Positions 26 to 593 of a stretch of 52,279 bases of DNA are shown piece after piece; the first letter of the stretch is position 1, and every line of letters begins with the position of its first letter. The notes under the pieces were generated by a model, which had not been told where the DNA came from, made no database searches, and was given only the letters and a program-made list of their open reading frames with translations. Source of the stretch: Octopus bimaculoides. Taxonomy: Eukaryota. The position numbers and the translations under genes were made by a program. Location of the stretch: the NCBI RefSeq assembly GCF_001194135.2, contig NC_068987.1, positions 44,578,508-44,630,786 on the forward strand, in the 5' to 3' direction.

Positions 26-33
<8 letters not shown>

Positions 34-593
34 AATATTTCTAAGTCTCTCTAAACGAGACTACAGCAGCGGTACTGGATACTAATAATTATCACCAAGC
101 CAACATGGCAGTCCCAAATATAGGACGAATGCTGCCGTGGATTAGCTCCAAGAGGCCATCGCCTCTAACTAGCTGTGACACATGAAACTGTGTCCTTTAT
201 AATCTTTGAACAGGGGAGGTCACCAGCTTCCCCTTGCTGGTTTGGCATCTGCAGACTAGACTAGTTTCAGGGTGTTGCCCCTTGTCAATGCAGAGCAGCC
301 GAACCCAGCAGGCATCACTACTGACTATCCGTAGGAAGGTTATTTATCTAATTTCAGTGGAATACATCCACTGGTTTTCAGAAATAGAGATATTAATATT
401 TCTAAGTCTCTCTAAAGGAGACTACGGCAGTGGTACTGGATATTAATAATTATCGCCAAGCCAACATGGCTGTCCTAAATATAGGACGAATGCTGCCGTG
501 GATTAGCTCCAAGAGGCCATCGCCTCTAACTAGCTGTGACACACGAATCTGTGTCCTTTATAACCTTCGAACAGGGGAGGTCAGCAGCTTCCC
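26..593 (-). mobile_element. ORF-less tandem element (~361-nt period, ~1.6 monomers) with a hammerhead motif; retrozyme/Penelope-derived
   Basis: Direct repeats 26-232 and 387-593; degenerate hammerhead at 249-294 (minus); flanked by (AG)n and (TA)n. Confidence 0.7.
249..294 (-). ncRNA. Degenerate minimal type-I hammerhead ribozyme motif
   Basis: TCTGCA-TTGACAA-GGGG-CAACA-CCCT-GAAA-CTAGTCTAG-TC/TGCAGA: 6-bp stem I, 4-bp stem II, palindromic stem III, GUC triplet. Three transitions away from consensus, two of them at CpG. Confidence 0.7.

What the first reader, a model, noticed from the sequence alone, without database searches (positions are those of the whole stretch)
26..593. Retrozyme-like tandem (~361-nt monomer) with a decayed minimal hammerhead
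Seen: two ~205-bp direct repeats enclose a minus-strand motif with full type-I hammerhead geometry (6-bp stem I, GGGG/CCCT stem II, GAAA, palindromic ACTAG-T-CTAGT stem III, GUC site). Deviations are C3U, G8A and C11.1U, the last two being CpG transitions. In ribozyme sense the insertion begins about 20 nt after where the next cleavage site would fall (~614). Known: metazoan non-LTR retrozymes are 170-400-nt tandem monomers with minimal hammerheads related to those of Penelope-like elements, and they yield circRNAs. Inference: this is an octopus retrozyme family copy. I do not know of a description in cephalopods but cannot check the literature.
Basis: partly seen in the sequence, partly recalled or inferred. 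Interest (0 to 1): 0.85.

Follow-up and report, generated by a model that had tools for sequence, protein, structure and literature searches.

The report
Hammerhead-bearing short retroelement relics, octopus-like genome
The start of this window holds two old insertions of related, non-coding ~355-361-nt retroelements that carry a hammerhead self-cleaving-ribozyme motif and show the insertion scars typical of Penelope-like element machinery, so this is a cephalopod example of a known kind of element, not a new kind.

Summary
A 214-nt direct repeat (19-232 / 380-593, 93% identical, period 361) encloses a minus-strand motif (294->248) with complete type-I hammerhead geometry. It is the only such motif in the 52-kb window, and none of this quality appeared in 400 random sequences.

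Three points change the interpretation.
1. "C3U + G8A" is the U3-A8 core covariation already described in Penelope-like-element (PLE) hammerheads, and C11.1U keeps a G-U pair. The motif need not be decayed.
2. A second, 58%-identical family lies at 1316-2082. It has CUGAUGA...GAAA...UA at the homologous place. Helices I and III covary with family 1, and the fixed core nucleotides are identical. Its helix II is poor.
3. Both insertions are partial tandems with a 5'-truncated upstream copy. Family 2 adds a head-to-head inverted copy inside one perfect 10-bp target-site duplication. Family 1 abuts microsatellites. This matches PLE-type integration.

The family-1 locus has one ribozyme only, so it cannot release unit-length RNA.

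Best reading: old relics of short non-autonomous, hammerhead-bearing, PLE-mobilised elements of the retrozyme kind. No genome-wide family data could be obtained. Verdict: new member of a known kind, modest interest.

The parts
1..27 (.). (AG)13 microsatellite abutting the 3' end (ribozyme sense) of the family-1 insertion. It is the likely priming or target site. The window edge cuts it.
   Evidence: TRF. Read directly.
19..379 (-). Family-1 full unit, 361 nt, GC 45%, no coding capacity, strongly structured RNA.
   Evidence: Repeat period 361. Longest ORF is 70 aa. MFE -123 kcal/mol, z = -4.6. GC.
380..593 (-). Family-1 upstream copy, 5'-truncated. It holds the last 214 nt of a unit and has no hammerhead. 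It joins head-to-tail to the full unit, as a pseudo-LTR does.
   Evidence: 93% identical to 19-232.
248..294 (-). Type-I hammerhead motif of family 1:
- helix I 294-289 / 253-248 (6 bp)
- core UUGACAA 288-282 (U3-A8 variant)
- helix II 281-278 / 272-269 (G10.1-U11.1 wobble plus 3 G-C pairs)
- GAAA 268-265
- near-palindromic helix III 265-255
- C17 at 254, predicted cut between 254 and 253
   Evidence: The dimer fold with an intermolecular helix III gives -47.1 kcal/mol against 2 x -18.4 for two monomers.
594..676 (.). Right flank of family 1: (AT)5 at 594-603, a 41-nt unique G/C-rich segment at 604-644, then (TA)16 at 645-676. This is a microsatellite context. The 41-nt segment could be a PLE-type 30-40-bp 'tail' (speculative).
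   Evidence: PLE tails and microsatellite bias are described in PMC8557442.
1310..1319 (+). Left copy of the 10-bp target-site duplication CCTGTGATTA of the family-2 composite insertion. Its last 4 nt are also the element's 3' end (microhomology).
   Evidence: The 10-mer occurs only at 1310 and 2083 in the window. The chance of such a shared word between two random 36-nt windows is 0.004.
1316..1669 (-). Family-2 full unit (2a), 354 nt, GC 36%, homologous to family 1 over its whole length (58% identity).
   Evidence: nhmmer E = 3e-13 and 3e-11. Alignment A1. Identity.
1670..1771 (-). Family-2 upstream partial copy. The last 83 nt of a unit lie at 1670-1752. A ~19-nt fragment at 1753-1771 resembles unit positions ~35-53.
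   Evidence: Repeat families D2, D6 and I5. A1.
1540..1584 (-). Family-2a hammerhead-like motif at the homologous position:
- helix I UCUGUG / CACAAA (one C-A mismatch)
- perfect CUGAUGA at 1578-1572
- helix II AGAG..CCUA (only 2 of 4 pairs)
- GAAA at 1557-1554
- palindromic helix III AUCGCGAU at 1554-1547
- A17 at 1546
1769..2081 (+). Family-2b inverted copy, head-to-head with 2a (arms of 313 nt, 91% complementary). It holds the last 16 nt of a preceding unit plus unit positions 1-297. Its 3' part is missing at the insertion edge.
   Evidence: Inverted repeat I1. A1.
1870..1914 (+). Family-2b hammerhead-like motif: CUGAUGA at 1876-1882, GAAA at 1897-1900, helix III AUUGUGAU, A17 at 1908. Helix II is poor.
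2083..2092 (+). Right copy of the 10-bp target-site duplication CCTGTGATTA.

Best explanation
Positions 19-593 and 1320-2082 are two old insertions of two related families of a short (354-361 nt), non-coding, highly structured retroelement. Its transcribed strand is the window's minus strand for family 1 and copy 2a, and the plus strand for copy 2b.

The element carries a type-I hammerhead with a 6-bp helix I, a 4-bp helix II and a short palindromic helix III. That is the architecture of metazoan and PLE hammerheads that cleave as dimers in multimeric transcripts.

Inferred mechanism:
- Multimeric or circular element RNA is copied by the RT/GIY-YIG machinery of an autonomous Penelope-like element, by target-primed reverse transcription.
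- Priming uses short microhomology: ATTA/UAAU at 1316-1319, and (AG)n against a CU-rich 3' end at 19-29.
- The cDNA runs past one unit length. This leaves a full unit preceded by a 5'-truncated copy.
- In family 2, a second priming on the other strand added an inverted copy within the same target-site duplication.

The family-1 ribozyme uses the U3-A8 core covariant rather than being simply decayed.

The loci themselves are relics. Pairwise divergence of the duplicated parts is 7% and 9%. Family 1 has a single ribozyme and family 2 has a defective helix II. None can now release unit-length RNA.

Shown here: the repeats, the motif geometry, the homology of the two families, the covariation, the target-site duplication and the inverted/tandem layout. 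Inferred: transcription, cleavage, PLE dependence and the priming details.
For: 1. The geometry is unique in the window and absent from 400 random sequences.

2. The two families are homologous over the whole unit, and the hammerhead lies at the same place in both. At 58% overall identity:
- All 9 fixed core nucleotides other than positions 3 and 8 are identical. At 58% per-site identity that has a chance of 0.58^9, about 0.007 (my arithmetic).
- Positions 3 and 8 covary (U-A versus C-G).
- Helix III shares 0 of 6 nucleotides, yet all 3 pairs and the palindrome are kept.
- Three of the 6 helix-I pairs changed on both sides and still pair.

3. U3-A8 is a documented natural variant in PLE hammerheads. 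Metazoan type-I hammerheads typically have a 6-bp helix I, a 4-bp helix II and a short palindromic helix III, and work as dimers (PMC4209133). The predicted dimer is about 10 kcal/mol better than two monomers.

4. Partial tandems occur in both families. The composite 1320-2082 carries a head-to-head inverted copy and is bounded by a perfect 10-bp duplication found nowhere else in the window. This is the arrangement described for PLEs and their non-autonomous derivatives, as is the insertion bias for microsatellites (PMC8557442).

5. Size, GC below 50%, lack of an ORF and strong self-pairing (z = -4.6) fit metazoan non-LTR retrozymes (PMC7229834).

6. Other hairpins of the unit are conserved with compensatory changes: 91% of cells paired against 38-50% when partners are slid, and 9 pairs changed on both sides against 0-2.

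7. Penelope elements are present and recently active in octopus genomes (PMC13282606). A 2026 preprint derives animal retrozymes from PLE pseudo-LTRs.
Against: - No family-wide sample exists. There are only three hammerhead-bearing copies, and two of them come from one insertion event. The covariation therefore rests on a single two-lineage comparison.
- Rfam gives no hammerhead hit at E<=10.
- A covariance model built from the family-1 motif alone does not find the family-2 motifs.
- Family-2 helix II has 2 of 4 pairs in both copies, so its template RNA probably already had a weak or dead ribozyme.
- No PLE RT or endonuclease lies in the window. The RT fragments present look LINE-type: one is RVT_1 whose best named relative is jockey-like, and the other I judged by eye from its motifs.
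- The insertion ends do not coincide with the cleavage site.
- Half of the transitions between the two family-1 copies are at CpG. Independent decay of G8 and C11.1 is therefore plausible.
- Transcription and cleavage are untested.
Confidence: 0.6

Rival explanations
1. The element is a copy of a canonical-core (CUGACGA) retrozyme whose ribozyme has been killed in this copy by three independent substitutions: C3U, G8A and C11.1U. Two of them are CpG deaminations.
For: - CpG decay is strong here: 5 of the 10 transitions between the two repeat copies are at CpG.
- If N7 was C, then G8 and C11.1 both sit in CpG.
- Family 2 has the canonical C3-G8 pair.
Against: - The two core changes fall exactly on the pairing partners 3 and 8 and give the known functional covariant U3-A8.
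- With about 3.5% divergence per copy since duplication, three hits among roughly 13 core positions are improbable.
- C11.1U preserves pairing.
Confidence: 0.22
2. These are internally deleted or solo pseudo-LTR fragments of an autonomous Penelope-like element, not a distinct non-autonomous (retrozyme-like) family.
For: - PLE hammerheads lie in pseudo-LTRs.
- PLE insertions are heavily 5'-truncated and form tandem and inverted structures.
- The 2026 preprint finds retrozymes nested among PLE pseudo-LTRs.
Against: - Three independent junctions (379/380, 1669/1670 and ~1784/1785) join the unit's end directly to its start, with no ORF sequence. The template was therefore a ~355-nt unit repeated or circular.
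- Two diverged families keep the same unit length.
Confidence: 0.12
3. The element is an ordinary LINE-mobilised SINE, or a local DNA-level duplication, in which the hammerhead-like motif is a chance or irrelevant resemblance.
For: - Octopus genomes are 11-12% SINE, mostly unclassified families.
- A B-box-like GTTCGAA is conserved in both families.
- Rfam does not call a hammerhead.
Against: - There is no tRNA or 5S head (ARAGORN found 0; Rfam found none at E<=10).
- There is no A-rich or simple-repeat tail.
- The motif is significant against random sequence, and it is conserved with compensatory changes between families.
- A tandem-plus-inverted composite inside one target-site duplication is not the SINE pattern.
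Confidence: 0.06

Closest known systems
Metazoan non-LTR retrozymes (Cervera & de la Pena 2020, PMC7229834; for example the Mytilus galloprovincialis, Acropora millepora and axolotl Rtz_331/Rtz_353 repeats)
   Same: - Non-coding unit in the 170-400-nt range, with GC below 50% and strongly self-paired RNA.
- Type-I hammerhead with a 6-bp helix I and a 4-bp helix II.
- A short palindromic helix III that implies dimeric cleavage, as in the axolotl.
- Head-to-tail copies.
- Co-occurrence with PLEs in the host lineage.
   Different: - These loci are 1.2-1.6-mers with one ribozyme per direct array. They are not arrays in which each monomer carries a ribozyme.
- The core is the U3-A8 variant (family 1), or helix II is defective (family 2).
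- circRNA and cleavage are unknown.
- No loop1-loop2 tertiary contacts were assessed.
Minimal hammerheads of Penelope-like elements, including the U3-A8 core variant of Schistosoma mansoni Cercyon (Cervera & de la Pena 2014, PMC4209133)
   Same: - The U3-A8 covariation.
- Palindromic positions 15.2-16.2.
- Association with pseudo-LTR-type partial tandems.
- Pairs of motifs on opposite strands 100-700 bp apart. Here the 2a and 2b motifs lie about 330 bp apart.
   Different: - Helix sizes here are canonical (6 bp and 4 bp). PLE minimal hammerheads have a long helix II (6-8 bp) and a short helix I.
[quoted passage not shown]
- There is no adjacent RT/EN ORF.
PLE insertion architecture and non-autonomous PLE derivatives (Craig et al. 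2021, PMC8557442; for example the non-autonomous Chlamys element MRC1)
   Same: - A full copy preceded by a 5'-truncated copy.
- An inverted copy adjacent to the upstream end.
- Target-site duplication of variable length.
- Insertion at microsatellites.
- A possible 30-40-bp tail.
   Different: - No homology to an autonomous PLE could be tested.
- The inverted copy here lacks its 3' part (internal priming), rather than being described simply as 5'-truncated.
Schistosoma Sm-alpha and newt satellite 2 hammerhead repeats (from my own knowledge, not re-read here)
   Same: Repeats of about 330 nt with type-I hammerheads, found both dispersed and in tandem. The newt ribozyme cleaves as a dimer through a weak helix III.
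   Different: Those have the canonical C3-G8 core, large arrays, and demonstrated transcription and cleavage.

Membership tests
Hammerhead ribozyme, type I | Conserved core: C3 U4 G5 A6 N7 G8 A9, G12 A13 A14, A15.1-U16.1, and H17 not G | tested here: inconclusive
   Family 1 has every core position except 3 and 8, which form the documented U3-A8 covariant. Families 2a and 2b have every core position canonical.
Hammerhead ribozyme, type I | Three helices around the core, with helix I open (type I) | tested here: met
   Family 1: helix I has 6 bp, helix II has 4 bp including the G10.1-U11.1 wobble, and helix III has 4 bp as a hairpin or 10 bp as a dimer. Family 2 fails on helix II, with 2 of 4 pairs.
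Hammerhead ribozyme, type I | Match to the curated covariance models (Rfam Hammerhead_1 and related) | tested here: not met
   No hammerhead family is reported at gathering score or at E<=10 over positions 1-2500.
Hammerhead ribozyme, type I | Site-specific self-cleavage after H17 | not testable with these tools
   This needs in vitro transcription of monomer and dimer constructs.
Metazoan non-LTR retrozyme | Non-coding monomer of about 170-400 nt, low GC, no LTR | tested here: met
   The units are 361 and 354 nt with GC of 45% and 36%. The longest ORF is 70 aa and a six-frame search found no protein relatives. PBS and PPT were not searched for.
Metazoan non-LTR retrozyme | Head-to-tail tandem in which successive monomers each carry a hammerhead (dimer or larger) | tested here: not met
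   Family 1 is 1.6 units with one motif, because the upstream copy stops 21 nt short of the site. Family 2a is 1.2-1.3 units with one motif. The second family-2 motif is on the opposite strand.
Metazoan non-LTR retrozyme | Highly self-paired RNA | tested here: met
   MFE is -123 kcal/mol, z = -4.6, with 0 of 100 shuffles as stable. Hairpins are conserved with compensatory changes.
Metazoan non-LTR retrozyme | Multicopy family expressed as linear and circular unit-length RNA | not testable with these tools
   No cephalopod genome or transcriptome is reachable. There are only two loci in the window. External searches were empty.
PLE-type insertion / non-autonomous PLE derivative | Full copy preceded by a 5'-truncated copy (pseudo-LTR) | tested here: met
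   Family 1 has 380-593 upstream of 19-379. Family 2 has 1670-1752 upstream of 1316-1669.
PLE-type insertion / non-autonomous PLE derivative | Inverted copy adjoining the upstream end, with the whole complex formed in one insertion | tested here: met
   Copy 1769-2081 is inverted against 1373-1685 (91% complementary). The complex is bounded by the 10-bp duplication CCTGTGATTA at 1310 and 2083.
PLE-type insertion / non-autonomous PLE derivative | Insertion bias for microsatellites | tested here: inconclusive
   Family 1 lies between (AG)13 and (AT)5...(TA)16. Family 2 is not at a microsatellite. Two events give no statistics.
PLE-type insertion / non-autonomous PLE derivative | Sequence shared with the pseudo-LTR or 3' end of an autonomous PLE of the same genome | not testable with these tools
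   There is no PLE in the window and no Repbase, Dfam or octopus genome at hand.
tRNA/5S-derived SINE | Pol III-type head derived from a small RNA gene | tested here: not met
   ARAGORN found 0 genes. No tRNA, 5S or 7SL match was found at E<=10. Only a B-box-like GTTCGAA heptamer is present.

The most novel reading that the evidence does not exclude
These relics belong to a large, still active octopus superfamily of Penelope-mobilised, hammerhead-bearing mini-elements that current annotations file under 'unclassified SINE'. Their intact members would use a U3-A8-core dimeric hammerhead to make ~355-361-nt circular RNAs. If so, part of the octopus-specific 'SINE' expansion would really be a retrozyme expansion.
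Probability: 0.12. Interest if true: 0.6.

Novelty: new member of a known kind. Interest (0 to 1): 0.35.

Why it matters
If confirmed genome-wide, this would extend hammerhead-bearing, PLE-dependent mini-retroelements (retrozymes) to cephalopods. It would add a second lineage that uses the U3-A8 core covariant.

The locus also gives a clean natural example, a 10-bp target-site duplication around a tandem-plus-inverted composite, of how PLE-type integration handles a ~355-nt multimeric or circular template.

It also raises a practical annotation point. Octopus genomes are rich in 'unclassified SINEs', and some of them may be elements of this kind.

For this locus alone the finding is a relic with no expected present function.

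Tried and rejected
- **Rfam.** A scan of the whole window at gathering score, and of 1-2500 at E<=10, found no hammerhead. The only hits were microsatellite-driven miRNA look-alikes.
- **Other copies in the window.** blastn and nhmmer, with the unit and with a profile of all copies, found none beyond 19-612 and 1316-2130.
- **Six-frame 'pseudo-protein' query.** I searched the 5.8-billion-protein set with a six-frame translation of the family-1 dimer, hoping to fetch family members through spurious ORF calls. Of 8000 word candidates, none scored E<=0.1.
- **Genomic DNA through TE proteins.**
  - The best RT relative sits on a 796-bp metagenome contig.
  - The Octopus bimaculoides protein XP_014783059 is not on record.
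  - The window's 224-aa ORF is not on record either.
  - No octopus genome was reachable.
- **JGI metagenome pattern scans.** The first scan found nothing. The second gave five chance matches with no family homology.
- **Covariance model from the family-1 hammerhead alone.** It recovers only itself. The family-2 motifs are not found at E<=10. A weak hit at 21843-21869 is not a hammerhead on inspection.
- **MAFFT on the three hammerhead segments.** It mis-registers GAAA by one column, so I counted pairs on a manual structural alignment instead.
- **Alternative helix II for family 2.** Tried by hand, including the extra-nucleotide register of PLE minimal hammerheads. None was found.
- **tRNA-derived SINE head.** None found.
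- **Supplement of the O. vulgaris repeat paper.** It holds no repeat library.
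Full report
**What is there.**
The window is eukaryotic. It has about 37% GC, N gaps, LINE reverse-transcriptase fragments and a pogo-like ORF.

At the left edge, the repeat finder gives a 214-nt direct repeat at 19-232 and 380-593. It is 93% identical with a start-to-start distance of 361 nt (15 differences). Between the two copies, on the minus strand, the sequence reads UCUGCA-UUGACAA-GGGG-CAACA-CCCU-GAAA-CUAG-U-CUAG-U-C-UGCAGA, at 294->248. 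The same three departures from the canonical core are present: C3U, G8A and C11.1U. The upstream copy's homology stops at 593, which is 21 nt short of where its own cleavage site (614/615) would lie.

**Is it more than chance?**
I wrote a descriptor allowing either a CUGANGA or a UUGANAA core. It required helix I of at least 4-5 bp, helix II of at least 2-3 bp, GAAA, a paired or palindromic helix III, and U followed by a non-G base. It finds only this site in the 52-kb window on both strands. In 400 first-order Markov sequences of window length there were no hits with helix I >=6 and helix II >=4. The relaxed version gave 0.025 hits per sequence.

Rfam does not call it, at gathering score or at E<=10. 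That is a real negative. It is not unexpected, given the non-canonical 3/8 pair and the minimal helix III.

**A second family.**
nhmmer with the 361-nt unit finds homology at 1322-1523 (+) and 2069-1933 (-), with E = 3e-13 and 4e-10. Together with the repeat finder, this defines a second family.
- A full 354-nt unit lies at 1316-1669 (sense = minus strand).
- It is preceded by an 83-nt partial copy at 1670-1752.
- A head-to-head inverted copy lies at 1769-2081 (313-nt arms, 91% complementary).

The two families align over the whole unit (A1) at 58% identity (201 of 347).

At the position homologous to the family-1 hammerhead, family 2 has the following features:
- a perfect CUGAUGA (1578-1572, and 1876-1882 in the inverted copy)
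- GAAA at the same spacing
- a palindromic helix III: AUCGCGAU in 2a, AUUGUGAU in 2b
- A17
- a helix I that was 6 bp in the common ancestor of the two copies (UUUGUG/CACAAA)

**Comparison of the two hammerheads.**
- All nine fixed core nucleotides other than positions 3 and 8 are identical. At 58% identity per site that would happen by chance with probability 0.58^9, about 0.007 (my arithmetic).
- Positions 3 and 8 covary: U-A in family 1 and C-G in family 2.
- Helix III shares 0 of 6 nucleotides, yet all three pairs are kept. It is fully palindromic in 2a, palindromic apart from a central U-U in family 1, and kept through G-U pairs in 2b.
- Three of the six helix-I pairs differ on both sides and still pair.

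A conserved core with covarying helices is the signature of a ribozyme that was under selection after the two families split.

The weak point is helix II of family 2. AGAG...CCUA (2a) or CCCA (2b) gives only 2 of 4 pairs in both copies. I found no alternative register. Because 2a and 2b came from one insertion event, their template RNA probably already had this weak helix.

A covariance model built from the family-1 motif alone does not retrieve the family-2 motifs. The correspondence therefore rests on whole-unit homology plus inspection, not on independent structural detection.

**'Decayed' or variant?**
Cervera & de la Pena (2014) report a natural covariation within the catalytic core, 'U3-A8 instead of C3-G8'. 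They found it in Cercyon PLE hammerheads of Schistosoma mansoni, with about 1,300 genomic hits (PMC4209133).

The family-1 changes C3U and G8A are exactly this pair, and C11.1U keeps G10.1 paired as a wobble. The two repeat copies differ by 7%, which is about 3.5% per copy if they were identical at insertion. At that rate, three independent hits among roughly 13 core positions are unlikely. A single CpG transition at 11.1 is not.

On the other side, 5 of the 10 transitions between the repeat copies are at CpG. G8 and C11.1 would both sit in CpG if N7 was C. Family 2 is C3-G8.

I therefore favour the covariant reading but cannot exclude decay. Only a family consensus can decide.

**Architecture of the ribozyme.**
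A helix I of 6 bp, a helix II of 4 bp and a short palindromic helix III are what the same authors describe for most metazoan type-I hammerheads. These are inefficient as monomers and cleave as dimers in tandem transcripts (axolotl data in PMC7229834).

RNAcofold of two family-1 motifs gives an intermolecular helix III (5 + 5 bp around a U-U) with swapped helix I strands. The energy is -47.1 kcal/mol against 2 x -18.4 for two monomers.

**Architecture of the insertions.**
Both families occur as a full unit preceded, in ribozyme sense, by a 5'-truncated copy joined head-to-tail.

The family-2 complex (1320-2082) is bounded by a perfect 10-bp direct repeat, CCTGTGATTA, at 1310-1319 and 2083-2092. 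That word occurs nowhere else in the window. The chance of such a shared word between two random 36-nt windows is 0.004. The tandem part and the inverted copy were therefore laid down in one integration event.

The last four bases of the left repeat (ATTA) are also the element's 3' end, which suggests priming by microhomology. The family-1 3' end likewise merges into (AG)13, and its other side abuts (AT)5.

Craig et al. (2021) describe this same set for Penelope-like elements and their non-autonomous derivatives:
- strong 5' truncation
- a full copy preceded by a partial copy (pseudo-LTR)
- often an inverted copy adjoining the upstream end
- target-site duplications of variable length
- microsatellite bias
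- a 30-40-bp tail

They contrast it with LINE-type integration (PMC8557442).

Three junctions (379/380, 1669/1670 and ~1784/1785) join unit end to unit start with no intervening sequence. The templates were therefore multimeric or circular unit RNAs, as the retrozyme model proposes (PMC7229834).

The insertion ends do not coincide with the predicted cleavage site, so linear self-cleaved monomers were not the direct templates.

**Other properties.**
- The units are 361 and 354 nt, with GC of 45% and 36%.
- They have no ORF above 70 aa and no tRNA or 5S head.
- The family-1 unit folds far better than shuffles: z = -4.6 on the ribozyme strand and -4.95 on the other strand.
- Outside the hammerhead, the alifold consensus of the two families has 42 pairs. 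Of the cells, 91% are paired against 38-50% when partners are slid, and 9 pairs changed on both sides against 0-2. Caveat: the structure was derived from these same few sequences.

**What it is not.**
It is not a functional retrozyme locus. Family 1 has one hammerhead, so a transcript would be cut once at most. Family 2's two motifs are on opposite strands and have a poor helix II.

The duplicated parts differ by 7% and 9%. On the octopus calibration quoted in PMC13282606 (Jukes-Cantor distance 0.09 to consensus, about 25 My), that is on the order of 10 My. This is an inference with wide error.

There is no PLE gene in the window.

**What is known.**
- Metazoan non-LTR retrozymes are described in cnidarians, mussels, amphibians and other animals.
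- A July 2026 preprint argues that they are non-autonomous derivatives of PLE pseudo-LTRs. It sampled vertebrates, a coral and a second invertebrate class, and its text mentions no mollusc or cephalopod.
- The giant squid genome paper lists 235 Rfam Hammerhead_1 hits without further analysis.
- Penelope elements are present and recently active in Octopus vulgaris, whose genome is 11.6% SINE. Its recently active SINE families are mostly 'unclassified'.
- I found no paper describing retrozymes or hammerhead-bearing repeats in cephalopods. The searched library is incomplete, however, and Repbase and Dfam could not be consulted.

**Limits.**
I could not obtain any other family member. No cephalopod genome is reachable with these tools, and the indirect routes failed:
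- six-frame pseudo-protein search
- contig look-ups through TE proteins
- two JGI metagenome scans

**Verdict.**

The best explanation is a pair of old relics of short, non-autonomous, hammerhead-bearing elements integrated by PLE-type machinery (confidence about 0.6).

Novelty: new member of a known kind. Interest is about 0.35. The finding is useful for people working on hammerheads and PLEs and for octopus repeat annotation, but it is not surprising.

Noticed in passing
window 1373-1685 and 1769-2081: The two family-2 copies form a 313-nt inverted repeat (91% complementary, 83-nt spacer). If transcribed, it would fold into a long double-stranded RNA hairpin. In a cephalopod that would be a plausible ADAR editing substrate.
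   Followed up: no
window 604-644: A 41-nt G/C-rich segment sits between (AT)5 and (TA)16, next to the family-1 insertion. On the minus strand it reads GTTAGGGGTTGGGGG..., which is telomere-repeat-like, and it contains a GGGTTG/CAACCC hairpin. It could be the 30-40-bp 'tail' seen at one end of PLE insertions, or simply flanking DNA.
   Followed up: partly
window 203-212, 564-573, ~1498-1507 and ~1950-1960: A B-box-like heptamer GTTCGAA (GTTCAAA in one copy, a CpG change) is conserved in all four copies on the ribozyme strand. It lies about 45 nt downstream of the predicted cleavage site. No tRNA-like fold was detected around it.
   Followed up: partly
window 16534-18009 (-) and 34088-34585 (+): Reverse-transcriptase ORF fragments (Pfam RVT_1, E = 2e-22 and 8e-19). 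The first is 64% identical to an O. bimaculoides 'jockey-like' protein and 79% to a protein on a 796-bp contig of ENA metagenome ERZ23499306, so octopus-like DNA is present in that metagenome assembly. From its motifs I judged the second to be LINE-type rather than PLE-type as well.
   Followed up: partly
window 41833-42228 (+): An ORF with a CENP-B N-terminal DNA-binding domain (E = 7e-9). It is probably a pogo/Tigger-type DNA transposon remnant.
   Followed up: no
window 6464-7138 (+): A 224-aa serine-rich ORF with no Pfam match and no exact record in the gene-position collection. It may be an exon or a chance ORF.
   Followed up: partly
window ~4330-4900, ~13700-14000, ~18400-18500: Runs of N (assembly gaps) flanked by (TA)n/(TATG)n-type simple repeats. 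The window comes from a gapped scaffold, so repeat structures near the gaps may be incomplete.
   Followed up: no
window 48870-48957: A long (CT)n/(AG)n microsatellite of the same repeat type as the one abutting the family-1 insertion at 1-27.
   Followed up: no
window 21843-21869 (-): A weak match (11.5 bits, E = 0.85) of the family-1 hammerhead model to AGGGUCAACAUCCUGAGAUCAGUCUUC. On inspection it has no hammerhead core or helix I and no unit homology around it, so it is probably chance.
   Followed up: yes
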